64,000 nucleotides of DNA from Diadema antillarum (lineage: Eukaryota): NCBI RefSeq assembly GCF_040938485.1, contig NW_027271183.1, forward strand, positions 186,001-250,000, given 5' to 3'. Shown here one piece after another: positions 13,247 to 54,206 of this stretch; position 1 is the first letter of the stretch, and the number at the start of each line of letters is the position of its first letter. Below the pieces are notes generated by a model, which was not told the DNA's origin, searched no databases, and saw only the letters and a list, made by a program, of their open reading frames with translations. A program made the translations under genes and the position numbers.

Positions 13247-15380
13247 ATGGCTGCTGCTCAGCCTTTAGGCAGGAATGTGCCGAACCAGGAAGAGTTTGGA
13301 GGATTAACTATCCAAGATGGGCCATCGATTCAAATATGACGTCGATGCCATAGTTCGTTAGTGTCGGAACCATGGACTACTTGCCACACACATGGACTGT
13401 GCTGCCTTTGGCCGACCATGTCAGAAAAGACCCTACAACAGGACAATTGATGGCGTCACTTGGCGTTGCCCATCCCAAGCCTGTTGTAAGACAGTGAACA
13501 TTTGTGAGGGAACTTTTTTTTTCGAGAAAAGCCACCTGCAACTCTGGTAGGTTTTTGCACTGTCATATATTTGGTCAACAAACTGTTGTTGGGTGAGAGG
13601 GCTACCTCAGGATGTCAAAATGAAGGAGATCGGAGTGTCCAACAGGACGACAGTTGACTAGATGCAGATTTCTTTCGTAATCTCTGAGTGCAACATTTTC
13701 AAAATCATCAACATCATATCGGAGGTCCGGGCGTCATGGTAGAGATCGATGGATCGCATTTCGCAAAATAAAAGAATAATGGGTTCTGGGCAGATACAAA
13801 CCTGCCCGCAAGGTAGGTTTTCTGGTCAAAGTCCAGCTGCGGGACGTGGCAACCTTGCTTCACCACATCCAACAATGGGTGGCCCCGGGGAGTGTCGTCT
13901 GGAAAGACATGTGGCGAGCGTACAACAATCTGCCAAACCTGCCCAGGCAGTATCAACACGAAGTGGTAAATCACAGTCTTAACTTCGTAGGCCTGAAACA
14001 CTGGAGTCACCACGAACAGAGTGGAATCAATGTGGTGGAGGGCTAAGGCGACGTTCAAGGCGCTGCAATGACAGACCAACCGGGAGATGATTGGGGATTA
14101 CCTGGCAGAGTTTATGTGGTCCTAGCACTTCTCAGAGAGTCCACTATTTCATCTGTGGACACAAATTGCCACGGACTTAGGCCCTGTCAATTAGTGTCGG
14201 AATCATGGACTACGTCCCACACACTTGGACTGTTCTGCATATGGCCATTTCAGAAAAGACCCTACAACAGGACAATGGATGGTGTCATGTGGCATTGCTC
14301 ATTCAAAGACTGTTGGAAGACAGTGAACATTTGTAAGGGAACTTTTTTTCGAAAAAAAGCCACCTGCAACTCTGGCAGGTTTTTGCTCTGTTATACATTA
14401 GTTCAACGAACTGTGGTTGGGCAAGAGGACTACCACAGGACGTCATAATGAAGGAGATCAGAGTGTCCAACAGGACGACAGCTGACTGGATGCAGTTCCT
14501 TCTTGATGTCTGCGTGCAATACTTTCAAAATCATCAACATCAAATCAGAGGTCCTGGCGTCGTGGTAGAGATCGATGGATTGCTATTCGCAAAGCGAAAG
14601 AATATTATTGGACACGCCACACCAGCAAAATGGGTTCTGGGCGGATAACAACCTGCCTGGAAGATAGTTTTTTTTGGTCGAAGTCAAGCTGCGGGACGCA
14701 GCAACCTTGTTTCACCACATCCAACAATGGGTGGCCATTGGCAGTGTCGGCTGGAGAGTCCACTATTTCATTCGTGGACACAAATTGCCACGGACTTGTA
14801 CCCCATCAATTAGTGTCGGAACCATGGACTACTAATTCCCACACACATGGACTGTCCTACCTGCGGCCATGTCAGAAAAGACCCTACAACAGGACAATTG
14901 ATGGTGTCACGTGGCGTTGCTCATCCAAAGCCTGTCAGAAGACAGTGAACATTTGTAAAGGAACAAGGCAAAAGAATATCGTCAGACACGCCACATCAGC
15001 AAAATGGGTTCTGGGCGGACAACAACACGCCCAGAAGATAGGTTTTCTGGTCGAAGTCCAGCTGCGGGATGCGGCAACCTTGTTTCACCACATCCAACAA
15101 TGGGTGGCCCCGCGCAGCGTCGTCTGGACAGACATGTGGCGAGTGTACAACAATCTGCCAAACCTGCCCAGGCAGTATCGACATGAAGTGGTAAATCACG
15201 GTCTTAACTTCATAGACCCTAAACACTGGAGTCACCACAAACAGAGTGGAATCAATGTGGTGGAGGGCTAAGGCGAAGTTCAAGGCACTGCAAGGATAGA
15301 CCAAACCGGTGATGATTGGGTATAACCTGGCAGAGTTTATGTGGTCCCAGCACTTCTCGGAGGGTCCACTTTTTCATCAT
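13247..15380 (+). pseudogene. Merlin (IS1595/ISXO2-like) transposase, three rearranged head-to-tail defective copies
   Basis: Motifs DGVTWRC..ACxKTVNI (zinc-binding), GGPGVxVEIDG..FAKRK, WVLGG, RDAATLFHHIQQWVAPGSVVWxDMWRAYNNL, HEVVNHSLNF and, after a frameshift, TGVTTNRVESMWWRAKAKFK. Multiple stops and frameshifts. Confidence 0.88.
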
Positions 15381-15960
15381 GATGAGATTGTTTACATCCT
15401 TGACTATCACAATGTTGCTAATAGAGGATACCATTCTCTTGCTCGAAAAAACAAATTTCTCTCTTGTGCCTGTCAGGTAAGGAAGAAATTGAATTCAATG
15501 ATAGACCTAAAACAGGTAGATGGAAAATATGTAGGTGCCTATACAAGCGTCAGAGAGAGTATCATTCGTGTCCTAAGGGAGCAGGTTGATAACGGCGATA
15601 CTGTGAAGGATAAGGTACGTGTGAAATTAAGTGGCGATGGTACTCGTATCACATGTAAGCAGAGTTTTGTGAACATTGCTATCTTACTTTTTCAGATCAT
15701 AAAGATGCTACTGTATGTCAGAAAATGGAAATCACTTGATTGCCATAATCAAATGCCCTGAAAAGAATGATTCTCTGAAATCTGCCATCCATGACTTGAT
15801 TGAGGAATTTGAAAATCTGAATACCATTTCTATTGATGGTAAAGAAATATTGATTGACTAGAAATGTCGCTATGGCGACTGGTATGCCTCCGCCATAATG
15901 CATGATTCTCCTAATAGGTCTAGATAGTACATGTGGACAATGTGTGATTACATTTTCACA
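15381..15960 (+). pseudogene. Fragment of a DDE transposase of the CMC/Transib (RAG1-core-like) type
   Basis: KVRVKLSGDGT, then across frameshifts GNHLIAIIKCPE.NDSLKSAIHDLIEEFENLNTISIDGKEILI, GDW and LIGLDST. This matches the DG ... GGDWKFL..G pattern I recall for aquatic-invertebrate CMC/Transib-like transposases. Confidence 0.55.
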
Positions 15961-16159
15961 AAATTGGCAAAATATTAAAATGACAAGTTTGTCACATATT
16001 ATGTGTTGAATGTCCACCTTCCTTGACCTAGGTTTAATTGGATGAATAGGAGAGCATGTATTTGGGATTTAAGGATTTTAACTTGACATTGACCCATTCA
16101 TACGTTTATGCATTGAGCAATTTTCAAGGTATGGAGAAAAAGTGCAATTTCTGTATTGA

Positions 16160-17110
16160 ATAGTAAATTGTTACCATTTTCATCTGGCCTTTGACCCTAA
16201 CTTCACAAGATAATCAGGCAGAACATGCATAAATACGTACAATGTAGCACATTTCAAGATAACTTGAGCCACTTCCGAGATATGGAGGAAAAAAAGTAGT
16301 TCAGCACTTTCACTTGATATTTGACCTTTTGACCTTTGAGGCAAAAACAGAAGGAAAAAAAAAACTTTCCAGAGAATCTCTATTAGGTTATAAATGCATA
16401 CACCAAGTGTAAAAAAAAAATAATCCTGCTGGCATTGCATAAACATGAGGGAAATAGTAAAATTTTGAAGTGTTGCCCTTGACCTTTGACCCCTGACCTT
16501 TGACCCCATGAACCCTAAATTCTCTAGATAATCACTGCCAGTCAGTACTATCTTCCATGAAGATACCTTGAACAATTTCCAAGGTACAGAGAAAAAAGAT
16601 GAAGTTTTAATAATTTTACTTGACCTTTTGACCTTTAATGTCATGACCCAAACTTTCACCAGAGAATCTTAGTGGGTAATACATATATAGACCAATTCTG
16701 TGACGCGCTATGTGTATTTTTGGCATGACCAGCGCCATTAACGCGATGTCTTAGCCGACCCCCCCTCCCCTCTCCCCACCCCCTTCCGCGCGCGGAATGA
16801 AAAACTGATGCATGGTCGTTTTAGCCAATAGGCGTCTCGTACTGAGTGCGCGAACACTTGCTTAGTTGGCGAACCTTTGTTACAAGTGCGTGATAAACAT
16901 GTTGCCCGGGGATGGGGGAGAGGAGAGGGGGTCGGCTAAGACACCTGAAAATGAGCTCATGGCTGCGCCCAGTGCCACAAATTGTCTGCTGCCTTCAACG
17001 AACCCGAATCAGTCTATACACTAAGTTTCAAGAAGATATCTTCAGGCATTGCATAGATATGGTGGAAATAGTGAAATTTACATATTTGACCTTGACCTTT
17101 TGACCTTTGA
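16160..17110. repeat. Degenerate TGACCTTTGACC-rich element (probable HINE core repeats), interrupted by a MITE
   Basis: Recurrent GACCTTTGACC motifs on both sides of the 16747-16943 insertion. Confidence 0.45.
16747..16943. mobile_element. ~197-bp MITE with ~35-bp TIRs
   Basis: TGTCTTAGCCGACCCCCCCTCCCCTCTCCCC ... GGGGGAGAGGAGAGGGGGTCGGCTAAGACA; no TSD evident. Confidence 0.7.
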
Positions 17111-17270
17111 CCTTGAGCACGTTCACCCAATTTTTAAAGAAATAACCGCCCATCTGACGGAAATGGGTTTCCAGGCCCGACCCTCATCGAGAGTAAAACA
17201 AAAAATAAACAGGCTGAAGGGGGAATACCGAGAGATGAAAAGAAAAATGAAGACAAGCGGTGAAGGAAAG
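17110..17270 (+). pseudogene. Myb/SANT-like (trihelix) DNA-binding domain fragment, typical of PIF/Harbinger ORF2
   Basis: IFKEITAHLTEMGFQARPSSRVKQKINRLKGEYREMKRKMKTSGEGK, followed by a donor-like GTATTG at 17271. Confidence 0.65.
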
Positions 17271-18039
17271 GTATTGATTGACAAGTCATCAAGGATTACG
17301 TAACGCCTTCGCTCGAGAATTCGAATTCTAATCACAGTTTTCGATTGAGCGTGTGTAAGGTCCGATAATTCTAAAGACGAATTGCAATCATCATTACAAT
17401 GATGATTCAAGTCATGAATTTTCTCTCGTGTGTAACCGATCTTGGAAAAAAGAGAAAGTTTTGCTGCCACTTGGAAAAGAGAGGAAATTCTGGTTCTCCT
17501 CCTTTTAGGAAGCAAAGAGTGAGAAAAACTACAAGACTTTGTGAACATTGTAGTGAAAGGAAGGAAAATCCAAATTTTGAACACAAATGAAATTGTTGTA
17601 CAACTGAACCAGTATACTTCTCTCAGTTAGGAAAAGAGGCAGAGTATGCATCACATTTATTGTTTTATGTTGGTTGCAAGGAAACTTGTTGTGTATACAT
17701 TTATAAAGACAAAAAGTACATGTTGAGTATAATTATGATGCGTGATACAGAAACCCTTTGGCAAAAGAAGATTTATTTGTTACTTTTCACTAAACAGTTT
17801 TGACAGAATTTTGGTTTTTTAAGCTATAAGAGTTAACAGTAACTGGATATAGCTTTCCCAAGAGGAGAATAGAAGTTATTATATAAATAGAATAAAAGGT
17901 GATTAAAAATATTGGTTGATTTATAATTTAAGCAAGAAGGAATTAATCAGAAATCAATCAGAGAAAGGAAGATAATGTGATATATAATTTGCTTGGAGTG
18001 AAATTGGTTTGATTAAGTAATCACATTTTTATATATTTC

Positions 18040-18960
18040 TGTGACAGCAACAAGAACTATTTTGAGCTACATGATGTACAAATGTTCAAGCAGTTATGAA
18101 TGTAACTTTATTGAGAATAAAGAGAACACTTTGCCATGCCATCTCAACCTAACCAGATCGTCTCTCCTCGTCTCTTTTTCCAGCGAGTCCAGTGAGTTTC
18201 TTTCTAAAAGACCCTTGCCACTGGCGCCACCTTGGCACAGGGCTTACATTTGGCGACCCTGCCAGGACGTCACACTGGCTGAAGAAATACAGGTAAGACA
18301 GCTGTGGCGTCCCATGGACCAGAACTAGGAATCCTGAAGAGCCTCTAACCAAGTACCCACACATCTACCATGGCGGCCAAACTCACTACAGTGATGCAGC
18401 AGGTGCAGGAAGGACTCCACAGGCTAGACGAGGGTCAACTCCTGGGGCTGGCAGAGACGCTGAAGATCTCCCCGGAAGAAGAGAAAAAGGTAAGGGGGAG
18501 AGGGAGGATGGGAGCCTTTAGGTGGGTGTGTAGGTATTTGGACAGGGAAGAGGTGGAGGAAATGGAGGACGGTGGACTGGCGGTTTTCGAAGGCGTGCTG
18601 CACTACATCGAAGGACTGGTGGGGAAAGAGAGCAAGGAAATACCTGCACCAGCAGCTGATGGGGCAGACACGTCCATCGGAGAGCACCAGCTACCACCAC
18701 CACAAGCCACACCATACGTTCAGCTACCAACCAACCCCAACTACATTCCCGCCTACTTCTCAGTCCACCATTAATCCAGCTACTTCATTCCTCTTCCCAA
18801 ACCAGTACCCGCCCATCCCTTTTCAGCACCAAACTCTCCCCCAATTCCTTGGTCACCCACAAGTACCACTAATAAGGCCACCATCAAACGCTGGCCTCAA
18901 TAGCCCCATCAATGCAACCATGAATATGCTGTATACTCGCAGTGCTGACGATAATCCTTA
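18040..18960 (+). mobile_element. 5' portion of a Gypsy-like LTR retrotransposon: LTR end, PBS and gag N-terminus (ORF 18370-18774)
   Basis: The LTR-like end CTTACA (18248) is followed by TT and TGGCGACCCTGCCAGGA (18251-18267), a tRNA-Arg-like PBS. The gag-like protein includes LAETLKI...VCRYLDREEVEEMEDGGLAVF. The LTR start is approximate. Confidence 0.6.
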
Positions 18961-19088
18961 AAATCACCTTGGAGATGCCGGCAGATGCACCCTATGGGCC
19001 AGCCCTACACAGTGACGGGATGAAGGTTCTCAACAAGATATGGACTAGAAGGACGTAACAACATGATTGTGAGGACAAGACGGGACCA

Positions 19089-19353
19089 ACGAAGAGTGGG
19101 AAAAAGCGGTACAAAGTCATCAAGCCCAAGTATAAGCCTGTGAAAGCATCAGTTAAGGTCTGCAAAGGAAAGGTCTCATTCTCCTATGTTCATGACCTCA
19201 TGGAAGAGGTATCCCGTCGCAGTGTTAACTACAGCGCAAGTGAACTGGAAAAGAAAGATGCCCCACCATTCCTTAGCAGCCAGTACATACATATACCAGG
19301 CCAAGGATGAGCTCATTCGCCAGCATACTAGCCGCTTCTGTCTGGATACCTGA
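19089..19353 (+). pseudogene. C-terminal fragment of a Kolobok-type transposase
   Basis: TKSGKKRYKVIKPKYK..KASVK.CKGKVSFSYVHDLMEEV...APPFLSSQY, then after a frameshift KDELIRQHTSRF. This matches the G..RY....PK.K / Y+..LM.EV / H.SRF tail as I recall it. Confidence 0.55.
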
Positions 19354-19801
19354 TTATCCATCCCATAGGCTTTCTTACTAGTCCTTTCATCCATATGCAA
19401 GTACTGCAGTATGCTTGACACATAGTTATAGACGAAGGTATCATGAAGACATGAACACTTTTTCATGGTTTCACTCTGGACCCTGTTTCTGTGAGACATG
19501 TACATTTACTGTATCATGTTCATAATCATATTGTATGCTTTGGGAGGCTGTTCTAGCAATAACTTAGCTTATGGCACACATATGGATGTCAAGATTAGTT
19601 AACCTTGCTTGCCAATTTGTATATCACTGTATATATGTTTAGTAGGTATAGACTAATTTTATATACATCATTGTAATATATCATAAACATGTATTCTTGT
19701 ATTTATGTGTTGTACTCTCATACCCCGGAATGGGGTCGGAAGAGTCGAATAAAATCTAAATCTAAATCTAAATCTAAATCTAATATATGTCATATGATGT
19801 A

Positions 19802-19980
19802 CAGTGCACTCCCGAACACGGTTATAACGAAATTCCAGTTGTAACAAAGTAAAAATTTGGGCCGTAACATTATCCACTTTATGTGTTTTTATTGTTTGTT
19901 TGTTCGGTTACAACAAAATTTCAATATAACGAAAGAAAACTGCCGGTCCCAAGGTCTTTGATATAATGGGAGTCCACTAT
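19802..19980. mobile_element. Tigger-like MITE; related copies near 5530-5702 and 44058-44265
   Basis: TA|CAGTGCACTCCC ... GGGAGTCCACT termini, and an internal GAAAGAAAACTGC motif shared among the copies. Confidence 0.6.
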
Positions 19981-21699
19981 GATACAGTCATTCAAGCATG
20001 AAAGAGGTTAACATGTGGCTTGGATTCCATAGTCTTACATTATTATCATAAAAGTACCCCTAGGTGTACTCAGTTCCTTCCTCTAGCAGATTATTATACA
20101 CCTGCCAAACATAGTGTGAAAGGGGTATGTGATAGGTATCAGTGTGACGTTAGTCGGGCAGGTGATGCAAACTGCGACAGCTTTTATGCAATTGACATAA
20201 AAATTTGTGTAAGTGATGAAATTGAGGTGTAGGTGTGCAAGACTTATTTTTTGTGTGTTTTTCAGACAAAGTGATGCCATGTTAACCAAAGTTTCATCAA
20301 AATGTTGTACAGCAATAACTTCCACAGCATTTTAGTAGTTAAGGTCAAAGTTGGTGTTTGTGATGGTCTGTTTCTATTTGTGCGACACACCCTTTGTGTT
20401 TGTACCTGACTAAGCATTAGCCATATAGTTTTCTTTTTTATATTCTATTTTAGTTGAGCCATTTACCACACAGTCAAGAGGTGATGTATAATGAAGTACT
20501 GTACAGATATCTAAGCACCTTCAACTTTTACAACCTTGCACTTTTTGTGGTCACCAACAAAAATGCGGGGTGCACCACCCCTCTTTATTCATTTATTTAT
20601 TTTTTAAACAAAAGAAATATGACAACAATAGGGGGGGGGGGCATAATTTCTGTAGGCTATCACATGTATTTTATGTATGTTTGCATGCCATTGCCATTTG
20701 ACCTTACCCCCAATACATGTACTATGCATAAATGCATCTCATATAATTAGTTACTTTCAACATTCTTTTGCTATACATGTAGTATCCAGTAGTGTTTCAT
20801 GTGCATGCTGTAAACACTAGATACGGTATGTGAACAATCTGTTTCATTATGAATATAAAGATTGTTTAGTGTTTGTTTCATATGTGAAGAGTGATCAAGT
20901 ATTTTTAGACACATGTAGGCTGAAAATGTATGCACAACACATTCTTGCCTTATGTTTGTTTGGTACAAATAATTCATGTTAAGCTTATCACTACTTATTG
21001 CATTGAACAAATGGGTCTTTTTCAGCTCAGTTTAAACCTATGTTGTGCCATGTAGTGTATGTAAACGATCCAGACAAGTTCTCGGTCTATATCATTGTAT
21101 CTTTGTTGTACACATTGCATACATCATGTGTGTTGAGAAAATGTTCAGAGTTTGAGAAAGGATTAAAGAGAATGAAACAAAATAGTGTTCCAATTACCAC
21201 ATACCTAAAATCAAGTTTGTATTCCTTTTTTTTTTTTGTACAATGTACCAGGTAGTAAAATGAAAAGGGAAAAGTACCTAAGATTTTTTTTAGTGTGTGT
21301 TTGTGTGTGTTTGCATTTGAAGTATGTGTGTGTGTCATAAAAGGAAACCCGAGTGTACTGTAGATGTACATACTTAGGGGGTGTTGTAAGAAAGTCGAGT
21401 TGCGATTAATTGCAAATATCTATTGCAACTTTGCAATAGATAGAACTACTGCAACTTGCAATCAATCGCAAGTTGCAGTAAGTTGCAAGAAGGGAGCTTG
21501 CAATTAATTGCAAGATGCAATTAATTCTAAGCTCCCTTACTGTATTTTGTATATTTATGAAAGCGACTGGCAAGACAAGCCTAGCAAGATGCAATTAATT
21601 TCAAATATGATTGTGGTATCTTGTATTTATAAAAGCGACTGGTTAGACAAGCCTACCAGATTTCTCTGTTTTCAGGTCATTCCAGCGATATCGTCTGTA

Positions 21700-21910
21700 T
21701 TTGCAACGCTAAGCTACAAAAACAAGCACTCATGGCCAAGTATGACAATGACAGACTAGAGCAGTACTCTTGGCGTGAATTGGTTCAGATATCTGGGATC
21801 CCAGCAATCAAAGACGAGGATGTCCATAAGAAGGTCATTGATCTAGGAAACAAGCTCGGCGTGGACATACGTGATCAAGATATCTCAGTTGCTCACCGCT
21901 ATGGAAAGAA
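21700..21910 (+). pseudogene. CR1/L2-type LINE ORF1 fragment
   Basis: KYDNDRLEQYSWRELVQISGIPAIKDEDVHKKVIDLGNKLGVDIRDQDISVAHRYGK matches the LEQYSRR..L.I.GIP ... DI..AHR motif of the ORF1p RRM-like domain. Confidence 0.8.
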
Positions 21911-23023
21911 GAGATACATCCACTGCCAACAAACTAGTGGCAGCACGCTAGTAACTGTACAGTAGGAATCAGTGGGAATGCTGGGGGTTGATTGTTCCAC
22001 TTCTTGTGGGATTCATTTAAGAGTACATTATATCTATTGTTTTGTGAAAATTATTTGTTTCAGAATGGTCTCATATTTAAGTAATGTGCAGTTTAATGTT
22101 TCCAAGTTAGCATGCCTGTACAGTGACAGGGCATTAAACTGCACAGTGCTTGAATATAAGACCGTTCTGAAGCAAATAATTTTCACACAACCATAGATAT
22201 ATAAAGCACTCTTAAATAAATCCCACAGGAATTGGAACAATCATCCCCCAGCATTCCCACACAAGATCAACCACCAACTCATCCTCTGGCTCAACATCCA
22301 CAGACCCAAGATCAACGACCAACTCATCCTATGCACACACAGCCTTCTTCCACTGAGCAGCATCATAGCCAACATTCCTACCACCAGCACCCCATTCCAC
22401 ATGATCAAGGTCCATCCCATTTTCAGCATGCACAAGGCCAGCAAAGCACATCTCAAAATTGTCAATCACTCTCGGAAGAAAACAAATGAGTACACCCTAA
22501 CAAAGATGTAAATGAGAACTATGATCTCCTGACTCCATGTAAAGGATTAAAGGTGAAACTCGCTGACAAAATCATCGCAGTTAGTTTGCCACCCACGCCC
22601 GGTCTCCATATCTCGAATGTTGCTGCCCCCAAGCTGCAATCAGCTCCGACGCAATCTGCATCTGAACTCGGAATTGAATTCTTGTTCCAGAGCTTTCCTT
22701 ATCCCACTACTGAACTCGCCCTGTAACAATGCATGATGACATGTATCCACTTCAAACTTATTTTTGTGGTGGTGTCAGAGGTTAGAAGTATTTCTTCTTC
22801 CTTAACTATCAAACAAGAAAATGTGTATAATTAATTAAGAAGGGGGGGGGGTGGGTATTTTTTTCTATCAATATGTATCACAATACACTGTAAAACTGTA
22901 AATGATGTCATTTCACATCAAAATGATATGTCATTATCAAAATGCAAACTTTATCCTACAAAATATTGGCCTACCTATGCACCTCATAACATTTTCCTTT
23001 TTTCCGTCTTTTACATTTGTTAG

Positions 23024-24271
23024 GGGGAAGCATTTAAAGAAGCTTGGTGCCTTTGGGAGCGACTATGGACGCTTGGCTTAGATCCCATCCCTCATCCCAT
23101 GGGCAGTTCCTGTTATAGCTTTGACTGCAACATCGTCACTGGCCTTGAGGAGCGAAATGATTTCTAATTTGTCACTCACATCACCGTCAATCATCACTGA
23201 CACGCCAGATCGACCGAATATTCACTACAGCATCATCAACACGTCACAGAAAGAGCAGCCAGAAATATTCCACAGTCTAGTCCTTGAGCTTAAGGAGAAG
23301 AAACAACAAGCAGTACAAACTGTCATCTTCTGCCGCACTCACAGACAGTGTCGTTTTCTGTACAGTTACTTTTTAGGTGAATTAAGCACTGAATGCAAAC
23401 AATACTTTGCAATGTTTCATTCAACCAGTGAAGAGAGTGTGAAGGATCACGCGCTGAAGTCGTTTTCAGACCCAGATGGTGTTGTCTGTATTCTGTTTTG
23501 TACAATAGCCTTAAATTTGGTATGGGGATCAACTGCCAGAACCTGACAAGAGTTTTCCACTTTGGACCGTCAGAAGACATTGATGACTTATGTGCAGGAA
23601 TGTAGAAGAGGTGGGCGTGGTGGTGAAATTTGCACAGCAGTTTTGGTTAAGTATCGTGGTTGTACACGTCTTCCTACCAGTCAGAGGATCAAAGAGTAAA
23701 TAGAAAAATGAGACGCGGTGCAGGAGAGAACTTCTTTTGGCACCTTTCGGCGAGAAACCAGACACAAGAACGTTAATGCATACATGCTACGATGTATGTG
23801 CAAAGAAGTGCACTTGTGGTGGGGTGATGTGCTCTGACTCACAGTATGGTGACTTTGTCATCATGAGTCCTGAAGCTGAAGAGGAGGACACTTCGGTTTG
23901 CAGAAGACTGACAGAAGAAGAGAAAGCTACACTCAGGGACCAACTCACGGCATTAAAGAGAGGAGAGCTTGCAAAACCAACGGTCAACACTATACGGCGG
24001 GCATGATCTTACTGGAGCTCTACCTCAACATGTTATCGACTTGATTGTAAGAGACTGTGAGATCCTAAATAGCCAACACATCAAGTATCCATTCTCTGGA
24101 AACTCATCAAGAGTATGGGAACTCATATCGGCCTCAGGAACTATTAGTACAGATAGCAGTGGACTCAGCGCCGAGTGCTCAGCGGAGCTTTCAGATTCAA
24201 GTGAATATTCTGACTCTGACATAGATACCGAGCACAGAGGAGTTCTGATTTTTTCATTGGACTCAGATTAA
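23024..24271 (+). pseudogene. RecQ-like SF2 helicase pseudogene, probably from an AcademH transposon
   Basis: Acceptor TTAG at 23020-23023, then (W)G...AFGSDYGRL*..VPVIALTAT, DRPNIHY, VIFCRTH, AMFHST, ILFCTIA, GMGINC, VFHFGP, GRGG and CRRELLL..F. Contains stops and frameshifts. Confidence 0.8.
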
Positions 24272-25589
24272 CTTTTACATACATGTACATACACTGTACA
24301 TGTACATCATGTACACATGCCTATTAAAGGGAATTCGCGCTTCGCGCTCATGATGTGCGCAGCGCACATTATTCACTTCAGATTTTTTCAGACTTTCTTT
24401 AAACCAGCTCTCACACCCCTGTTAACTGATATATATTTTGATAAACATCTGTGCCATGAAAGGTGTCTTGTGAAGCAATTTGTAGATAGAAATCTTTTAT
24501 ATTAGTGCTGTGGACAACTTATACCTCATATGCAACATGATCAAAGCAATTTGCAAAGACTTTTCAGAGACTGAACACTTAAGTGCTTGTGGAAATCAAC
24601 AATGTAAAGTTGGATGGTGCCCTTTACCTTGTTTAAGACAAACATGGCTTTGTAGTTGAATCCAAATCTTAGCTGCAGAGAAGTTCAAGTTCATGGATTC
24701 AGTGAGTAGTATTGTAAAAAATTACTTGTAGAACGTTCTGGTTGAAATCAAACCAGATTTTTTTGACTACACAACGACCACTTGCTACCCCTGAAAAGGG
24801 TAAATTAGCTCCCCCAAAGAAAGCGAGCACCACACAGTGAGTAATCACACTTTTATTGAAAAAAAAGGTATATTAAACGTGAAATTACAAGGAACCTTTT
24901 GCATATTTATAATACAACTGAAAGTATGTCGCAAACACATTTTTGATGGAATTTGGCAACTCGTCAATCTTCCAAGACTTTTAGTGTACGGTACTAATTA
25001 TATGAAGGGTAACTAAGCGGGTATCGGTCAATGAAAGAAGATATTCCCTCCCACCCGATGGAAGTTTTTTTGCATATTTTATTTTTTTCCTTTAACTGAA
25101 GTGAACTGTGATATGCTCCTCCCCCTCTCACAGGATCCACGTCCCTGCGTCAGATGTACGGTTGTGCATATTGCATCACTGCATTTTTAGGAAACACCTG
25201 GTCTGGAGAGCCTTGGTTTATATGGCCATTTGTTAAAGGGATGGATCAGTATTGCTGGAGATAAATATAGGCTTTTAACTTTCTGTGAGATAACAAGAAA
25301 CCACTTACGAAATAATACAGAGCATACATTATTCTAAGAGGAAATCAAAGTTTATAAGATGATAGTTGGTTTTGGAATGCCCGAGACATCCAAAAACACA
25401 GTAAAACAAAGTGATATAAATAAAAGGTGGGTACCATCTTTTATTAGGATTGCTCTGTTTTGGATATCTCAGCTATTTCAAAACCAGTTAACATCAAACA
25501 AAGGTCAAATCCCTCTTAATATGACATGCCCTTCCACATTTCATACGAGGTTTCTCACTATCTCACAAAAAAAGTTATAAACTTGAAGA

Positions 25590-26250
25590 CAGGTCTTAAC
25601 CAAAACCATGAAATCGAACGAAATATAGTATCATTCATCGCTAACGACCTCCAAGCTTGACTCCTGCAATGCTGTGCTTGGGAACCTACCGGAAATGGAG
25701 ATCAAGAGACTGCAACAGGTGCAGAATATAGCTGCCAGGATAGTAACCAAGGCCTGCAAGAAGCAGCACATCTCTGCTTTCAACTCGCCACTGGCTGCCA
25801 ATTCACCTTCGCATTTAGTTTAAGATTCTCCTCCTGGTTTTCAAGTCTCTAAATGGTAGCACACCTTCGTACATTTCTGAACTCAACAAAGATAATGCCC
25901 CAACCAGAAACCTTCGGTCAACTCGTCTGCACCTTTTCCAAACACCCAGGGTTAATACCAAGTGCTACGGGCAGCGTGCTTTCAGCACCTCAGCACCAAC
26001 ACTCTGGAATTCTCTTCCTCCCCAACTCCGAGATGCATCAACTGTCAACAGCTTTAAGAACTCACAAAAAACTTTAACTATTTTCGCACTGCTATACTCT
26101 GTAATTTTCTGTAGATTAAGTTTTGTTTGTTTATTTTGTTTGTTTACTTTTTCTGTTTATGCATGTTATTACATGTACTGTGAAACGCATAGAGACTTAT
26201 GCTTGTATTAAGCACTATAAAAGATGTTATTATCATTATCATTATTATTC
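25590..26250 (+). mobile_element. 3' end of an L2-clade LINE: RT C-terminus, 3' UTR and (ATT)n-like tail
   Basis: SKLDSCNAVL.NLP...IKRLQQVQNIAARIVT, HWLPI, FKILLLVFKSLNG.TPSYISEL and YGQRAFS.SAPTLWNSLP. The tail reads GTTATTATCATTATCATTATTATT. Confidence 0.9.
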
Positions 26251-26339
26251 CTTTTTTCTTATACATTGTCTTATACTTTAAGAAATTCCGAAAAAAAACA
26301 TCATCTTATTTGAATATAGCTCACTCCTAAAACGGACTC

Positions 26340-28123
26340 AATGTTGCGCGGCGAAATCAATTTGGCATAAAAGCTCATGTTACATGCAACTAAAACAGAG
26401 AACCACTAAAGAAGGACGACAGTACAGTGCGGGCCTGATTTTGAAAACTACAAATCTGGAATCATCTTCTACAATAATACCTGCCTACAGCAACAGCTGT
26501 CAAACCCAACTCTAGAAAAAAAAAACTTCATAAATTAGACATCCATCAAAGGGTAATTTTCACCTCTCTCATAAGGACAGAAAAAAATCTTCATCTTACA
26601 GATAACACAATTTAGCAGATAAAGTTTTGCTAGTTTGTTTTGTTTCTTTGTTTACTTTTTCTGTTCAAATGCATAAAGTTATGAATGTGAAGCACATAAA
26701 AACTAATGTTACATTCAAAATTACCTCACTACATGCAAAATGGCAACTGCGAAAGTTTACGTTCTTGAGAGGTTCGAACAGAGAACCACTAAAGAAGGAC
26801 GATGGTATAGTGCGGGCATGATTTTGGACGCTACAAATCCGAAATCATCTTCTACAATGATACCTGCCTACAGCAACAACTCTGGAACCAAGCTCCAGGA
26901 AAAACTGAATAAACTCCAGGTCAACCAACGAGTCATTTTCACCTCAGTGATTAAGCTCATGTTACATTCAAAATTACCTTACTACATGCAAAATGGCAAC
27001 TGCGAAAGTTTACGTTCTTGAGAGGTTCGAACAGAGAACCACGAAAGAAGGATGACGGTTTAGTACGGGCATGATTTTGGATGCTATGAATCCGGAATCA
27101 TCATCTACAATTCTACCAGCATACTACAACCATACAGGAACAAAACTAGAAGAAAAACTTCATCAAGTAGACATCCAGCAAATGGTGACTTTCAGTGCGG
27201 GCATTATTTTGGATACTATCAATCCAGAATCATCTTCAACAATGATACCTGCCTACAGCAACAACTCTGGAACCAAACTCCAGGAAAAACTGAATAAACT
27301 CCAGGTGAACCAACGAGTCATTTTCACCTCAGTGATTAAGCTCATGTTACATTCAAAATTACCTTACTACATGCAAAATGGCAACTGCGAAAGTTTACGT
27401 TCTTGAGAGGTTCAAACAGAGAACCACGAAAGAAGGATGATGGTACAGTACGGGCATGATTTTGGATGCTATGAATCCGGAATCATCATCTACAATTCTG
27501 CCAGCATACTACAATAATACAGGAACAAAACTAGAAGAAAAACTTCATCAAGTAGACATCCAGCAAATGGCGACTTTCAGTGCGGGCATTATTTTGGATA
27601 CTATCAATCCAGAATCATCTTCCACAATAATACCTGCCTACAGCAACAACTCCAGAACCAAACTCCAGGAAAAATTCCATAAATTAGACATCTATCAAAG
27701 CTACATTTTCATCTCTGTGATAAAGACAGAGAGTTTTGTTTATTTGATATGTTTTTTTTTTATACTTTTTTCTGTTTATGCATAATGTTATGAATGTGAA
27801 ACACATAGAAACTTAAGCTTGTATTATGCGCTATATAAGATATCATTAATATTATCATTATCATTATTACTCATTTTTTCTTAATACATTGTCTTATACT
27901 TCCTTAAAAAGAAAAGTCCCCCAAAAAGATAATCTCATTTGAATATCGCGCATTCTAAAAACGGACTCGTAATAATGCATACTACTAGTATACGTATATT
28001 ACTAATGTTGTGCGGCGGAATCAATTTGGCATTTATCAAGATACAAAAGCTCATGTTACATTAGAGATTACCTTATTATGTGCAAAATTGCAACTGCTAT
28101 TACAAAGTTTACGTTCTTGAGAG

Positions 28124-28162
<39 letters not shown>

Positions 28163-28600
28163 TATTTGGCATTTGCAAAACAATACAAGTGATAACAGAG
28201 AAACACAATAAACAGGTTTTAACAGAGAACCACAAAAGAAAGACAACAATACAGTGCAGGTATGACTTTGGATGACCGAAATCATCTTCTACAATTCTAC
28301 CGGCCTATTGCACCAACGCACAAACAAAACTAGAAGAAAAACTTCATCAAGTAGACATCCATCAAATGGTGACTTTCAGTGCGGGAATTATTTTGGATAC
28401 TACCAATCTGGAATCATCTTCCACAATAATACCTGCCTACAGCAACAACTCTGGAACCAAACTCCAGGAAAAACTCCATGAATTAGACATCCATCAAAGA
28501 GTGATTTTTCACCTCTGTGATTAGGAGGGAGAGGAGTCTTTGTCTTAATGACAACTCAAAGGTATATACATATCAGCTATTCTCAGCATGTTCTTATTAC
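26340..28600 (+). repeat. Complex tandem array of a decayed ~85-aa OB-fold-like ORF interleaved with copies of the L2 3' UTR
   Basis: ATG units at 26740, 26993 and 27378 (periods 253 and 385 bp), with degenerate units near 26385 and 28087 and an internal 132-bp module duplicated. Confidence 0.8.
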
Positions 28601-29377
28601 AAATGAATCACAAATTATAAATCATCATGTCAGAAATTAAACAGAACAAGTCTGTAACAAATGTCACATGCTTTAGTATTATCAAAATACTAGACTAGGT
28701 CTATCCCACATTCATGAAAATTACCTTAAATATTGTGCGATATACAATTAATGTATTTTGATCAAAATTGGCAATAGCAAAGATTTTGTTATTTTCAGCT
28801 TATTTAAACATAATTTGAACATCCTAAAACTCATCCTCTCTCACTTCAATGCCTACACTTGTTTGAATGCAACTCATAAACGTTGTTAGCACAGACAGCG
28901 CACTAACAGTACTGATAGCAATGATTTGACCTCACAGAAGCGTGCTGTTATTCGAAATCACTATAAGGGCTGTTAGCCTAACATTTCGAGGCCGCCCAGA
29001 AATAACAGTAGTGGTGATGTTTTAACAACACACTAACAGTGCCAGGGGCACCGATTGTGAAAATGTTAGTGAGTATCATTTTTTTGCGTGTGCTGTAACT
29101 TCAGTTGTCTCCTGTTTTTATACCATGTAGACATACTTCAAAATAGATTGACCTAGACCTCATCAAGAATGAAGGGGGTTGTGGGTGAGATAGATTTTGC
29201 TAATGATGACACGAGGAGACCAAGATATGATCCTTTTCAAGAAGAAAGTGGAAGTGATTTTTTTCCCCCCAGGAAATATCTGTGTTCCAAAGGTGTGCCC
29301 TTTTGACGTTTTAACAGTTAGGTCCTGCTCGGGAAAGAACACTACATATTGTACCCTAAATACAATCAATGCAACAT

Positions 29378-29575
29378 AAAGGACAGGACCATCTTCTGAT
29401 AGACATGCAGGTTGAGTGAATGCAGCAAGATAATACATCAGTGAAAGTTTGAGGAAAATCGAACAATCCGTTCAAAAGTTATGAATTTTTGAAGTTTCTG
29501 CTAAGTCACTGCTGGATGAGAAGACTACTACAGGTTGTGATGTCACATGTGTAGAACAATATAAAGAAAATAACA
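29378..29575. mobile_element. Single arm of the Kolobok-like MITE family seen complete at 39958 and 54207
   Basis: Shares GGTTGAGTGAATGCAGCAA...CATCAGTGAAAGTTTGAGGAAAAT...CAATCCGTTCAAAAGTTATGAATTTTTGAAG with those copies. Confidence 0.75.
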
Positions 29576-29629
29576 TTTTTACATGTTGAATTTTCACGCT
29601 TAATTCCGAAAGCTTATCTCAAAAGGTAA

Positions 29630-29990
29630 GTGAAGCAGATGAAAGCTGAGAGAAAGAAGATTCTGGGACAGGTTGATGACCTGGAAAATCGAGGTCGGAG
29701 GTGCAACTTCTTGTTTAAGTGTTCAAGAGTCTCCATGTGAAAACTGCTATGATACTGTCAACAAAATACTTTGGGATTTCATCGGTCTTCCTCTGGACGT
29801 GATTCACATCGCAAGATGCCGCAGAAATCCTCCATCAGTACAACAAAGAAATGATCAGAAAAATCAGAACAATCCAAGAGTCATACATGTGGCGTTTGCT
29901 ACATTTTCAGAAAAGGAAAGAGTTCACCACACTAGCATCACTAAGTTCAAGGAGGGTCATTTTAAAGGTCACAAAAGGTTTTGTCATGAT
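29630..29990 (+). pseudogene. LINE ORF1 (L1/CR1-type, Transposase_22-like) fragment
   Basis: QVDDLENRGRRCNFLF, then after a frameshift QESPCENCYDTVNKIL..IGLP...HIARC...PRVIHVAFATFSEKERV. Confidence 0.75.
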
Positions 29991-30877
29991 AAAAAGGGAA
30001 ACACTTAGATGGGATTACTGCACGACACTCTGCCTGTGCTTGTTATACAGTAACTCTGCACTGCCATCAAGTATAACATGCACTGGAATCATTTGTTAAG
30101 CCTATGCATCAATTACCTGGAGTACCCAAAAGAGCAGTACCTCATTATGCAGAGATTACTGTACAACACAAATTTGTTTGTACATAAACTGCATAATACC
30201 AAACCTCTGACATAGCATTATCTATAAGCCAGTTCGGGGTTCCACTTTGAGCATGAGCAGAAAAAGGTCATCTGTACCGGCAGAGCATGTTGGCTTTTTA
30301 TTCACTGAGATAAGCATCTGTGATGTACTGATTATTCAAGTGATCATTATGAGTGGTGCTTGCCAGCACATCCACCTGACAGCAAAAGTGATATTTGACA
30401 ATATCAATAGAAAAAGATTATTAATACATTCAATGCAAAATAATGAAATGGATGCTTTCCAAAGTGCTAATTGATGGATCATTCCGGTCACCTGGTCTAC
30501 GCAAGTTCATCCTTTGTTTCAACTGAAATACCTTCTCTCGCTTGAAAACGCGTGGAGTGCCTAATCAACTGAGAAAGAAGAAAGGTCATTTGTACCGATG
30601 TGCCCATGAGCCAACCCCGAACTGGCTTATTGCCTACATGGTTGTAGGAGATGACATCAATAGAGGATATAAATGCAGTCTTCAAGGAAGTAAAACTTTC
30701 TAGAAATCAGTGCTCGGTTTCCTCAGTTGCAACGGATTCCACCTCATTGGCCCCGACAGTACTCACTCTCCATGCAGGTATTCCTGAATGCCGTTATGAG
30801 TTATCATGCTCTTTCACGACAGCGTTCCTCTCGAGATTTAAGAGTAGTCACTCACTCCAGTGATGCGGGGTCAACGG

Positions 30878-33800
30878 TCATGCTTTCCTCAGTGGGTAAA
30901 CCCTCATGTGTTCCCTCAGCTGCCCAATGGGAGTCTCCCAGTGCCGCTCAAAGTAGACATTCAGGAGCAGCTTCGACCTCGGCGCCATCTGTAAGACAGC
31001 CGGCACGTAGTGTGTGAGCAGCTCCCGCCTCTCGCTGCAAGGGTAATCACAGAGACATTCTAGCAGATTAATATTCTAACTAGGAAAAGCACTCTGAGAG
31101 CGCAAACCTCCACAAAGCAGTTAATTTCCATTCATACACACATACAATGTATATGCTGAAAATGGCTCTATTTCTCCATGATAAAAAATCCTTTGTAGTG
31201 TCTCCACCACTTGATGTGTGTGCCTCACTCAGTGATTGTACATGTACTGTATGTGCATCTAAAATACATTCAACTTGAATTTCTTTGTTTTTTGGCCCTT
31301 TTTACAATTGATACATAATCCTTCAAACAATTAAAAACAATTTCAGCATCCAGACAGTGATTTGAATCACTACTACATTCAATCATCTGTTCCTTGTGTC
31401 ATCAAGTTTTCCTGTAAATTACATCCAAATATATTTACAAATCTTTAGTTATTTTGCAAACAGACAGACAGACAATCAAACAAACCAACACCAGCAAAAA
31501 TTAACATAACCTCCTGGGCTGAGGTAATAACTAAGACTGTGCATTAGAAGAGTTCCGATAGCTCCCTTACTCAGTCCATAATGATTCACATTCTGGAACG
31601 GCTTACCGGTTCAACAACAACATATTAAAAAAACACACATTAAACACAATTTATATCGAACTGCAGTAAGGCTTACCTTCCCGACAGATTGATGGGGCCC
31701 AAAATGGCTCCCAAGGCACACATGGGCAATCTGGTTTGGACCGCTTCAAACCACTTCACAACCACCTCCCCCATAATGTTGATGGGCATGTCTAGGAGGG
31801 TGTGGTAGAAGTCGTGGACCTCCCGGTAACGCTGGAGAACATACGCTAGGTCTGGATCGTCGACGAAGCGCACAGGTGCTCTTGTATCAGCTGAGATGTT
31901 CTATGGAGAATTGATACAACGTAACATACATGTTCTGACTTGCTAAAGATCTGATTTTCATAAACTTAAAATATCTATTCCCGCTTCAAAGTATCAGGGC
32001 CATGTGCTATTAAAAGTGCACCTGTACTCAAACGTCATAAAAGATGTTTTAAGGGATATTTGTCATCATGTAGTGTATTACATATACTCCTTTTTTTTTT
32101 CAACAGTACGATACATTTAACTTCTTGCGAATGAGTCTCTCTTTTTAACTTACATACACACAAAAATGAAACCATCAATTTGAATTAAGTTTATCAAATG
32201 CAAACTACTACATTGAGACTGTGTGATGAAAGCCACAATTTTTTTGTTCAAAAATTTCAGTTGGGATTTCCTATTTAAATGACTGAAACAAAGAAACAAA
32301 GAAATAATGAAACTCACATTGGACACCATGAAATCATGATACATCTTTCCAAATGTGTCATCTGGTAGACCAGCCAGGTATTGCATATCAACAGTCTTGT
32401 GACTGATGCGAGGTCTCTCCCTGTGAGAGCAAGAAACAGAGAGAGAGAGAGAGAAATAGTGAGGGTGAATGGTATTAAAGATGGCACGGTGCACATTTTA
32501 AAGGCATTATTTACCATTTGCAGATGAAACAAAAACCCAGCTTAAGTGCTTCAAAATACATCTAAAATGTGAGTTAGGGATAGTAACAACCAATGTAAAA
32601 ATGTCAATCAGTATAATCAATGAACCATAGTTAATAATAGAATTGTTTCAATAATAAAACGTCTACAGTTATGGTTTATTGATAAAAATAGTGATATCTC
32701 TGTATATTTAGGCTTTATTGCAAAATTTCAATATGGCATGATGAACTTTTTGTGATACAAGTGACCTACAGAGTACTCATATGCATCAAATGTGATAACT
32801 CGAATATTTCTTTAAATCACTGCTCCCAAAGGTAAAACAATACCTTTAAGCCTTAGTAAGTGCATTCTATTGCTACCATGACAAAGTTAAAACCCCACTC
32901 TAAACTGAGAAGTTCTGTCACATTCACATCTGAAGATGGTTTTTTAACATTAGAAATTGATTAATTATACTACATGACACAAAATATTCACTTGTTCTAA
33001 ACGATAAGTTAGTTGCACTACAAAAGAAATAAAAAATAAGTATTAGTAATAAAATCAGGTGATTTCAAGTTTATGTTAGATTTGCTAGAAGATTTTCATA
33101 CACATTGAGATGGGAAAAATCTGAAGAGCATCATGCTGATTAGTTTAATTTCACTTCAATCATGAATCGAACTTGATATGAAAAATAAAAATGAAGAGAT
33201 AAAATTTGAACATCAAATATACAAGCTTGACCTGTTTTAAACTTCAGCTTTCATTTTTTGGGACCACTGTTTGATCAATGCTTCAATCACGGCACTCACT
33301 CACATGGGCGTCACCAGGGGGGGTGCGTTGGGTGCGAACGCACCCCCCTTCAGCCTGAAAAAAAAAAACAAAAAAAAAAAACAACTTCAGTCTGCGAGCG
33401 ATCTCAACGCCGGACACTAAATGATTATTATTTTTTATCTATTGTTTTGTTTTTTTTTTTGAAATTTTACATCGGGGACAAAAAAAAAAAAAAAATCTTG
33501 GGCAAAAGCAATTCGCACCCCTGGTTCTGGCAACACTGATTTTATACATATCTACTAGTACAAGTGTATTCTATACAGTGTTGACGATATACATAGATTT
33601 TGACATCCTTCCCATACTTGGTCACTTCGACGCCACCTCGCTGGAAATACCTCCCCCAGTCATGAACATAAACCGACACCCCTGACTACCAGTTGCGGAT
33701 CCAGGGGGAGGGGCGCACCGGGCGTCCCCCCCCCCCCGCCCCCTCTTAATTTCCAAAGCGAAAAAGTATAGCTATACAAACGGCAGTTTTTGTACTGTAA

Positions 33801-54200: not shown

Positions 54201-54206
54201 TCTTAA

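What the first reader, a model, noticed from the sequence alone, without database searches (positions are those of the whole stretch)
13247..29990. Candidate unistrand piRNA cluster: all recognisable TE coding fragments share one orientation
About ten unrelated fragments are all on the + strand: Merlin, CMC/Transib-like, Myb/SANT, Gypsy gag, Kolobok, LINE ORF1 (21700), RecQ helicase, L2 RT, the OB-like array and LINE ORF1 (29630). If orientation were random and independent, the chance of ten matching is about 2 x 0.5^10, or 0.002. Several fragments abut with little or no spacer (Merlin to CMC-like at 15381; gag region to Kolobok near 18960). The block lies directly downstream of minus-strand COQ4, so read-through or a minus-strand lncRNA would be antisense to every fragment, as in flamenco-type clusters. 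Caveat: I may recognise + strand fragments more readily than minus-strand ones.
Basis: partly seen in the sequence, partly recalled or inferred. Interest (0 to 1): 0.72.

Follow-up and report, generated by a model that had tools for sequence, protein, structure and literature searches.

The report
Same-strand transposon debris between convergent genes
The stretch is a transposon-littered gap between two housekeeping genes in which the five verifiable transposon gene remnants do all point the same way, but that is too few to mean much and nothing in the sequence shows it to be a piRNA cluster.

Summary
Window 13247-29990 is most of a ~22-kb spacer between two convergent genes: a proteasome beta-subunit gene (+, last exon ends ~8603) and COQ4 (-, last coding exon 30881-31075).

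I scanned all ORFs on both strands against Pfam and followed up with profile searches. Five of the ten claimed fragments hold up, all on +:
- Merlin/IS1595 DDE
- Myb/SANT-like domain
- LINE ORF1p-like RRM piece at 21.6 kb
- RecQ-family helicase remnant
- C-terminal tail of a LINE ORF2 (the RT domain itself is absent)

One claim, the ORF1-like piece at 29.6 kb, is weak. Four found no support: gag, Kolobok, CMC/Transib-like and OB-like.

No transposon domain was found on the minus strand, whose only hit is a marginal, non-transposon FAXC_N match. Long ORFs are also skewed, 43 on + against 23 on -, and 0 of 300 shuffles reach that difference.

So the strand bias is real, but it rests on about five independent insertions (two-sided p about 0.06). 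The Merlin pieces and the 385-bp array are local duplications.

The block is 16.7 kb and has no verified Gypsy/LTR content, so it fails the size and content criteria of flamenco-type clusters. Whether it makes piRNAs cannot be tested from sequence.

The most likely reading is ordinary intergenic transposon debris. I put the piRNA-source reading at about 7%.

The parts
5855..8603 (+). 3' part of a proteasome beta-subunit gene, the left neighbour, which converges on the block
   Evidence: Pfam Proteasome matches 5855-6184 (profile positions 69-125) and 7466-7702 (positions 107-154). I read 8256-8603 as the last exon from its translation; Pfam gave no hit for that ORF.
13358..15378 (+). Merlin/IS1595-type DDE transposase remnant, present as three overlapping direct partial copies (about 13358-14153, 14135-14964, 14754-15378)
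   Evidence: DDE_Tnp_IS1595 in 14507-15268 (E 2.5e-6) and 13780-14043 (E 4e-6). Self-alignment shows the copies are 81-89% identical.
15379..15758 (+).
   Evidence: No Pfam, word-search, PDB or viral-contig hit. The Merlin homology ends at 15378.
17025..17587 (+). Myb/SANT-like DNA-binding domain remnant
   Evidence: Myb_DNA-bind_4, E 2e-5, 25.3 bits against a gathering score of 27.
18017..18958 (+).
   Evidence: One relative only: P0001, 106 aa, 80% identical, unnamed. No Pfam or PDB hit.
19179..19505 (-). Marginal FAXC_N-like ORF, the only minus-strand domain hit and not a transposon domain
   Evidence: E 2e-4, 21.8 bits, below the gathering score of 27. About 550 ORFs were scanned, so this could be chance. 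There is no PDB support.
19787..19998 (.). Copy of a ~200-bp interspersed repeat
   Evidence: Other copies lie at 5550-5699 (+), 44042-44258 (+) and 43008-43185 (-).
21633..21962 (+). LINE ORF1p-like fragment (RRM region)
   Evidence: 577 relatives at E<=1e-3, mostly 250-310 aa. Their profile A9 matches L1 ORF1p structures 2ykp, 2yko and 2w7a at E 2e-4. A local HMM finds no other clear copy on either strand.
21972..22260 (.). Palindromic hairpin, MITE-like, directly after the ORF1 fragment
   Evidence: Inverted repeats I9/I10. The reverse self-match is 82% identical.
23082..24003 (+). RecQ-family helicase remnant, running from motif III to the zinc-binding module, with frameshifts
   Evidence: Helicase_C E 2e-3 and RecQ_Zn_bind E 2.4e-3. 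PDB matches to WRN (3e-6), BLM and RecQ.
25605..26073 (+). C-terminal tail of a non-LTR retrotransposon ORF2, from a 5'-truncated copy
   Evidence: 35 related metagenome loci. In L005, L007 and L013 the tail ends an ORF with RVT_1 (E 1e-30 to 1e-34). tblastn maps only residues after the RT domain to the window.
26119..28559 (+). 385-bp tandem array with 132+253 sub-units; its left flank 26119-26339 is repeated at 27732-27968
   Evidence: TRF reports period 385 at 95% identity. Repeat families D3, D6, D11, D12 and D16 and self-alignment. The ORF has no homologue and its fold model has pLDDT 41.
29371..29612 (.). Partial copy of a palindromic foldback element
   Evidence: It matches 39951-40523 and 54203-54769 in both orientations.
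29643..30005 (+). Possible second ORF1-like fragment, weakly supported
   Evidence: HMM E 0.22. hhalign probability 11%, in register with the RRM region. No PDB hit.
30297..31075 (-). 3' end of COQ4: last coding exon 30881-31075 and the first minus-strand AATAAA at 30297-30302
   Evidence: Coq4 profile positions 171-219 fall in 30881-31075. Earlier exons lie at 31676-31900, 32153-32497 and 37404-37595, in descending profile order. AATAAA list.

Best explanation
The block is an ordinary intergenic graveyard of old, broken transposon copies. It fills most of the ~22-kb spacer between the 3' ends of two convergent housekeeping genes: a proteasome beta-subunit gene on + and COQ4 on -.

At least five unrelated insertions left recognisable coding remnants: a Merlin DNA transposon, a Myb/SANT-bearing element, a LINE ORF1 piece, a RecQ-like helicase gene copy and a 5'-truncated LINE. 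Local tandem duplication then multiplied the Merlin piece and a 385-bp unit. Small palindromic MITE-like elements were inserted between them.

All five remnants point the same way. With so few independent events this is most simply a chance run. No special function follows from it.

What is shown: the identities, orientations, duplications and flanking genes. What is inferred: that the shared orientation has no function.
For: - Flanking genes and their convergent orientation.
- Five tool-verified remnants, all on +.
- All are fragmentary. The RT domain is missing, the helicase starts at motif III and has frameshifts, and ORF1 is cut by a hairpin element.
- The Merlin pieces and the array are local duplications, so they are not independent.
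- Five of five on one strand has a two-sided probability of 0.0625 before any correction for a genome-wide scan.
- The block is 16.7 kb. Flamenco-type clusters are 227-1085 kb and Gypsy-rich (PMC10643416), and no LTR or Gypsy domain was found on either strand.
- piRNA clusters cover only 0.27% of a snail genome (PMC6128900), so the prior for any one block is low.
Against: - The bias is complete. No transposon domain was found on the minus strand in a strand-symmetric scan.
- The excess of long ORFs on + (43 against 23) is beyond all 300 shuffles. It persists after redundant copies are removed (35 against 20).
- If the weak or unidentified + ORFs (29.6 kb, 18.3 kb, 15.4 kb) are also separate transposon remnants, the chance probability falls to about 0.01-0.03.
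- All transposon-type domains of the 64-kb window lie in this block.
Confidence: 0.75

Rival explanations
1. Small unistrand piRNA source. A minus-strand transcript crosses the block antisense to the transposon remnants and is processed into antisense piRNAs. The transcript would be either read-through from COQ4 past its poly(A) site near 30.3 kb or a separate lncRNA.
For: - All verified remnants are on +, so they are antisense to transcription coming from COQ4.
- The block starts about 300 bp beyond the first COQ4 poly(A) signal.
- It holds several unrelated transposon classes at higher density than the rest of the window.
- Snail piRNA clusters are enriched for DNA transposons as well as Gypsy elements (PMC6128900).
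Against: - There are no small-RNA or transcript data.
- Only about five independent orientations support it.
- The block is 16.7 kb, far below flamenco-type sizes, with no verified Gypsy or LTR content.
- The minus strand of the block has 13 AATAAA hexamers.
- No promoter can be assigned.
- The remnants look old and have no close relatives in the databases. The best matches are 62% identity for ORF1 and 40-61% for the LINE tail, so they are poor guides against active elements.
- The prior is about 0.3% of the genome.
Confidence: 0.07
2. Orientation filtering by host transcription, without piRNAs. COQ4 transcription often runs past its poly(A) site. Insertions that are sense to it, carrying their own splice and poly(A) signals on the minus strand, were removed by selection. 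That would leave antisense (+) copies, as is known for transposons inside introns.
For: - An antisense bias of intronic transposons, attributed to selection against sense-oriented terminators, is documented (PMC3517506 and PMC1794541, abstracts).
- The remnants are antisense to COQ4.
- The + ORF excess is strongest in the 8 kb nearest COQ4: 12:1 and 8:3 ORFs per 4-kb bin.
- The + strand of the block has A>T, the same sign as in the COQ4 gene body (0.04-0.06).
Against: - The block is intergenic, not intronic, and extends 17 kb beyond the gene.
- The same copies are sense to the proteasome gene that converges from the left.
- The A>T skew is stronger inside the verified coding remnants (0.10) than in the rest of the block (0.04). 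It may simply reflect A-rich transposon sense strands.
- The sample is too small to separate this from chance.
Confidence: 0.12
3. Non-independence. Several neighbouring remnants belong to one composite or segmentally copied unit, so a single insertion or duplication event set their common orientation.
For: - The Merlin zone is three direct partial copies.
- The left flank of the array plus array units is duplicated as a ~1.6-kb higher-order unit next to the LINE tail.
- The ORF1 fragment at 21.6 kb and the ORF2 tail ending at 26.07 kb are about 4.4 kb apart, roughly the length of one full LINE. This comparison is my inference.
Against: - No EN or RT remnant lies between the ORF1 piece and the tail; a RecQ-like remnant sits there instead.
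- None of the 35 loci related to the tail carries this ORF1 family, though most are short contigs.
- Merlin, Myb/SANT, RecQ-like and LINE remnants are not known to me as parts of one element.
Confidence: 0.06

Closest known systems
Ordinary intergenic transposon-rich spacer (TE graveyard) between convergent genes
   Same: It holds mixed classes of fragmentary, frameshifted transposon genes, MITE-like palindromes, a tandem array and local duplications. No intact element remains, and it lies between the 3' ends of two housekeeping genes.
   Different: All five verifiable coding remnants share one strand, where about half on each strand would be expected.
flamenco and flam-like unistrand piRNA clusters of Drosophila (PMC10643416; FlaHMM, PMC11400887)
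   Same: Transposon fragments are arranged predominantly in one orientation next to a protein-coding gene. In principle they are antisense to a Pol II transcript.
   Different: - Size: 16.7 kb here against 227-1085 kb.
- Content: no verified Gypsy or ERV remnants here, whereas in flam-like clusters the strand bias is driven by Gypsy elements alone.
- No promoter and no piRNA data here.
- The animal is not Drosophila. Its identity is unknown, and the one named relative of any fragment comes from a snail.
Genic/3'UTR-derived and proTRAC-type piRNA clusters of other animals, e.g. molluscs (PMC6128900)
   Same: The size range of tens of kb is compatible. DNA transposons are enriched in snail clusters. 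The location just past a gene's 3' end would allow a read-through precursor.
   Different: These clusters are defined only by mapped small RNAs, and none are available here.
Antisense orientation bias of transposons in transcribed regions (PMC3517506, PMC1794541)
   Same: The remnants are antisense to the nearest upstream transcription unit, COQ4.
   Different: The effect is described for introns, not for 17 kb of intergenic DNA. The copies are sense to the other convergent gene.

Membership tests
flamenco-type unistrand piRNA cluster | Abundant piRNAs (24-32 nt, 1U) derived from one genomic strand | not testable with these tools
   No small-RNA data or mapping tool is available, and the species is unidentified.
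flamenco-type unistrand piRNA cluster | Strong strand bias of transposon fragments, antisense to the cluster transcript | tested here: inconclusive
   5 of 5 verified remnants are on + and 0 on -. The ORF asymmetry is 43:23, with 0 of 300 shuffles reaching it. That is only about five independent events (p 0.06), and no transcript is known.
flamenco-type unistrand piRNA cluster | Large size (227-1085 kb in PMC10643416) | tested here: not met
   The block is 16.7 kb and is bounded by genes at about 8.6 kb and 30.3 kb, so it cannot exceed about 22 kb.
flamenco-type unistrand piRNA cluster | Enrichment for Gypsy-family LTR/ERV fragments | tested here: not met
   No RVT, rve, gag or other LTR-retroelement domain was found on either strand. 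The claimed gag ORF has no support. Non-coding LTRs could not be searched.
flamenco-type unistrand piRNA cluster | Discrete Pol II promoter at the 5' end; spliced, capped precursor | not testable with these tools
   The only candidate driver is COQ4 read-through. The promoter scanner offered is bacterial and uninformative.
Merlin (IS1595-like) DNA transposon | DDE transposase of the IS1595/ISXO2 type | tested here: met
   DDE_Tnp_IS1595 at E 2.5e-6 and 4e-6, at or just above the gathering score (28 and 27.3 bits against 27). Terminal inverted repeats and target-site duplications were not sought; the copy is fragmentary.
Non-LTR retrotransposon (LINE) | ORF2 with a reverse transcriptase; ORF1p with coiled coil and RRM | tested here: inconclusive
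   The window holds only the post-RT tail. Membership is inferred from relatives in which that tail follows RVT_1. The ORF1-like piece belongs to a family whose profile matches L1 ORF1p. The clade (L2, CR1 or other) was not determined.
RecQ-family helicase | Helicase C-terminal lobe followed by the RecQ zinc-binding module | tested here: met
   Helicase_C and RecQ_Zn_bind lie in consecutive ORFs, with PDB matches to WRN, BLM and RecQ. Whether it is transposon-borne or a host pseudogene was not resolved.
   No Pfam, word-search, PDB or viral-contig hit for any of them. The array ORF model has pLDDT 41 and is helical.

The most novel reading that the evidence does not exclude
The spacer downstream of COQ4 is a compact, read-through-driven unistrand piRNA source in a non-model, probably invertebrate, animal. 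COQ4 transcripts that miss the poly(A) site at about 30.3 kb would run antisense through Merlin, LINE and other remnants and feed the piRNA pathway. This would be a minimal, gene-tethered analogue of flamenco.
Probability: 0.07. Interest if true: 0.5.

Novelty: already known. Interest (0 to 1): 0.18.

Why it matters
If the block were a piRNA source, it would be a small, gene-tethered unistrand cluster outside insects. That would be useful for asking how clusters arise from read-through transcription. As it stands, it mainly shows how easily a short run of same-strand transposon remnants appears in intergenic DNA. It also shows that half of the labels given by eye do not survive a database test. 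The practical value is a checked annotation of this spacer and a corrected estimate of the statistical weight: about 0.06, not 0.002.

Tried and rejected
Searches that found nothing:
- Pfam on all stop-to-stop ORFs of 50 aa or more, and then of 33-49 aa, on both strands of the block. This added nothing beyond the five families listed, and the short ORFs gave no hit at all.
- Word-index protein search. The 'gag' ORF returned one unnamed 106-aa protein. The 'CMC-like' ORF and the array ORF returned nothing.
- PDB sequence search for the 'gag', 'CMC-like', 'Kolobok', FAXC-like and second 'ORF1' ORFs, and for three long minus-strand ORFs. Nothing was significant.
- Viral-contig scans for the 'gag' and 'CMC-like' ORFs.
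- tRNA and Rfam scans of the window, run to find SINE heads or known RNAs.

Tests that did not help:
- The AlphaFold model of the array ORF has pLDDT 41, so I ran no fold search.
- I asked whether the ORF1 piece and the LINE tail belong to one LINE family. No ORF1-family hit appeared in the 35 tail-related loci, but most are short contigs, so this is inconclusive.
- The bacterial promoter/terminator scan is irrelevant for a eukaryote.
- CpG observed/expected and AT skew, tried as indirect signs of germline transcription, do not discriminate. CpG is depleted everywhere, and the A>T skew has the same sign as in COQ4 but is stronger inside the transposon ORFs.

- The species stays unidentified. 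The only named relative of any fragment is a hypothetical protein of the snail Batillaria attramentaria.
- I examined host genes exon by exon, by reference.
- The window has no N, and nothing in it looked human.

Full report
**Setting**

The window is eukaryotic DNA of 64 kb, about 40% G+C, with no N. I scanned the flanks ORF by ORF against Pfam. The plus strand gave a proteasome subunit, a zf-DNL gene and a BTB-BACK-Kelch gene. The minus strand gave Coq4 in four ORFs. Neither flank gave a transposon domain.

The Pfam profile coordinates fix the geometry.
- COQ4 exons run from 37404-37595 (profile positions 1-30) through 32153-32497 and 31676-31900 to 30881-31075 (positions 171-219). The gene is on the minus strand and its 3' end faces the block.
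- The first minus-strand AATAAA after the stop is at 30297-30302.
- On the left, a proteasome beta-subunit gene on the plus strand has exons at 5855-6184 and 7466-7702. By my reading of the translation, its last exon ends at 8603.

The block 13247-29990 is therefore most of a ~22-kb spacer between two convergent genes. I looked at exons one by one, by reference, and joined no spliced model.

**Strand-symmetric test of the observation**

I listed every stop-to-stop ORF of at least 50 aa in the block, 75 on + and 56 on -, and ran each strand's set against Pfam at the same threshold.
- Plus strand: DDE_Tnp_IS1595 (two ORFs), Myb_DNA-bind_4, Helicase_C and RecQ_Zn_bind.
- Minus strand: only FAXC_N at 19179-19505, with E 2e-4 and 21.8 bits, below the gathering score. 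It is not a transposon domain and has no PDB support.

ORFs of 33-49 aa gave nothing on either strand.

A second test needs no database. The block has 43 ORFs of at least 70 aa on + against 23 on -. In 300 dinucleotide-preserving shuffles the difference is -1.3 +/- 4.8, and none reaches 20. The total of 66 is twice the shuffle mean of 31. After redundant Merlin and array copies are dropped, the count is still 35 against 20. The excess is strongest at 24-32 kb.

The coding remnants really are on +.

**The ten claimed fragments**

*Confirmed*

1. Merlin. 14507-15268 and 13780-14043 carry the IS1595-type DDE domain.
2. Myb/SANT. 17025-17300 matches Myb_DNA-bind_4 at E 2e-5.
3. LINE ORF1 at 21.7 kb.
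   - 21633-21962 has 577 relatives in the 1.84-billion-protein library, mostly 250-310 aa.
   - A profile of 33 of them matches human and mouse L1 ORF1p structures over the RRM region at E 2e-4.
   - Four of 41 relatives also match Baculo_FP.
4. RecQ. 23082-23543 and 23704-24003 match Helicase_C and RecQ_Zn_bind, and WRN, BLM and RecQ in the PDB down to 3e-6.
5. 'L2 RT'.
   - 25819-26208 has 35 relatives in metagenome contigs.
   - In L005, L007 and L013 the homologous tail ends an ORF with RVT_1 at E 1e-30 to 1e-34.
   - tblastn of those ORFs against the window aligns only residues after the RT, at 25605-26073 on +, and nothing on the minus strand.
   - It is a 5'-truncated LINE tail, not an RT. 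I could not assign the clade.

*Weak*

6. The second 'ORF1', 29643-30005, aligns in register with the RRM region. The scores are only E 0.22 (local HMM) and 11% hhalign probability, and it shows no similarity to the first piece.

*Not supported*

7. 'Gypsy gag' (18017-18958). It has no Pfam hit, no PDB hit and no viral-contig relative. Its one database relative is unnamed, 106 aa and 80% identical.
8. 'Kolobok' near 19 kb. Nothing was found.
9. 'CMC/Transib-like' (15379-15758). Nothing was found. The first residues of that ORF, up to 15378, still belong to the Merlin copy.
10. 'OB-like array'. This is a 385-bp tandem repeat whose per-unit ORF has no homologue. Its model is unconfident and helical.

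**Independence**

Self-alignment shows that the Merlin zone consists of three overlapping direct partial copies, 81-89% identical: 13358-14153, 14135-14964 and 14754-15378. This counts as one event, not several.

The homology ends at 15378.

The array (26394-28559) and its left flank (26119-26339, repeated at 27732-27968) form a higher-order local duplication directly after the LINE tail.

The ORF1 piece is followed at once by a palindromic hairpin at 21972-22260. A partial palindromic foldback element lies at 29371-29612, with full copies at 39951-40523 and 54203-54769. These elements have no orientation.

None of the 35 tail-related loci carries the ORF1 family, so I treat the ORF1 piece and the tail as separate.

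That leaves five verified independent units, all on +, for a two-sided probability of 0.0625. With the weak or unidentified plus-strand ORFs it could fall to 0.01-0.03. The block limits were also chosen after the fact, and the finding comes from a scan of many windows.

**Is it a piRNA cluster?**

The defining property is one-stranded production of small RNAs, and that cannot be tested here. The sequence-testable criteria used for flamenco-like clusters are a size of 227-1085 kb, enrichment of Gypsy-family LTR elements, a strong antisense bias driven by those elements, and a discrete promoter (PMC10643416; FlaHMM works on Gypsy content per strand in 5-10-kb bins, PMC11400887).
- The block cannot exceed about 22 kb.
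- It has no verified LTR-retroelement domain on either strand.
- It has no assignable promoter other than read-through from COQ4.
- Its minus strand carries 13 AATAAA hexamers, against 10 on the plus strand.

Clusters of other animals are smaller and can be rich in DNA transposons. In the snail Lymnaea stagnalis, however, they cover only 0.27% of the genome (PMC6128900), so the prior for any one transposon-rich spacer is low.

Indirect compositional signs do not help.
- CpG is depleted across the whole window (observed/expected about 0.35-0.7).
- The A>T skew of the plus strand (0.06) has the same sign as in the COQ4 gene body. It is stronger inside the verified transposon ORFs (0.10) than in the rest of the block (0.04).

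**Explanations**

- Ordinary intergenic accumulation of old transposon fragments whose shared orientation is a chance run: most likely, about 0.75.
- Orientation filtering by COQ4 read-through transcription without piRNAs, analogous to the documented antisense bias of intronic transposons (PMC3517506 and PMC1794541): about 0.12. The copies are, however, sense to the converging proteasome gene.
- Several remnants travelling together as one composite unit: cannot be excluded, about 0.06.

**Novelty and limits**

The element types are known superfamilies, and the arrangement is what intergenic DNA commonly looks like. I rate it 'already known', with low interest.

Limits:
- No repeat library or RepeatMasker was available, so non-coding SINE, LTR and MITE copies could not be oriented.
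- The large protein searches were capped, and all four went to plus-strand ORFs. The minus strand was covered by Pfam, a local ORF1 HMM, tblastn with LINE ORF2 proteins and three PDB searches.

Noticed in passing
window 33733-35624: A 166/333-bp satellite array lies inside a COQ4 intron. It is G+C- and CpG-rich (CpG observed/expected 0.99, against about 0.5 around it).
   Followed up: partly
window 4375-5231: A 159-bp tandem array of about five units, 72-99% identical, lies within or next to the proteasome-subunit gene. It has long ORFs on both strands that are probably spurious.
   Followed up: no
window 39951-40523 and 54203-54769; partial copy at 29371-29612: A family of ~570-bp palindromic foldback (MITE-like) elements. 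The two full copies are 87% identical to each other.
   Followed up: partly
window 51736-52278 and 53657-54207: A pair of ~550-bp direct repeats, 94% identical and 1.9 kb apart. They lie in a CpG-rich stretch (52-56 kb, CpG observed/expected 1.0-1.1) upstream of the KLHL20-like gene. They could be LTR-like ends of a small element or a tandem duplication.
   Followed up: no
window 63340-63559: A perfect 108-bp tandem duplication (2.0 copies, 100% identical) within the Kelch-gene region.
   Followed up: no
window 37404-42587: COQ4 (-) and a zf-DNL (DNLZ-like) gene (+) are arranged head to head. About 4.8 kb separates their first recognisable coding exons, and CpG is higher at 38-40 kb (0.80), which suggests a shared promoter region.
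   Followed up: no
window 19179-19505 (-): This ORF gives a marginal FAXC_N match (E 2e-4, below the gathering score). It is either a decayed fragment of a failed-axon-connections-like gene or a chance hit.
   Followed up: partly
window 18349-18771 (+): An ATG-initiated 134-aa ORF has one 80%-identical 106-aa relative on a 710-bp ENA contig and belongs to no known family. Its nature is unknown.
   Followed up: partly
window 16194-17112: Degenerate repeats built on a TGACCTTTGACC-like motif give rise to a spurious 162-aa minus-strand ORF.
   Followed up: no
L019:385-3651: A metagenome contig related to the LINE tail carries a 1089-aa ORF upstream of the tail match with no Pfam domain at E<=0.001. 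That is odd for a LINE ORF2.
   Followed up: no
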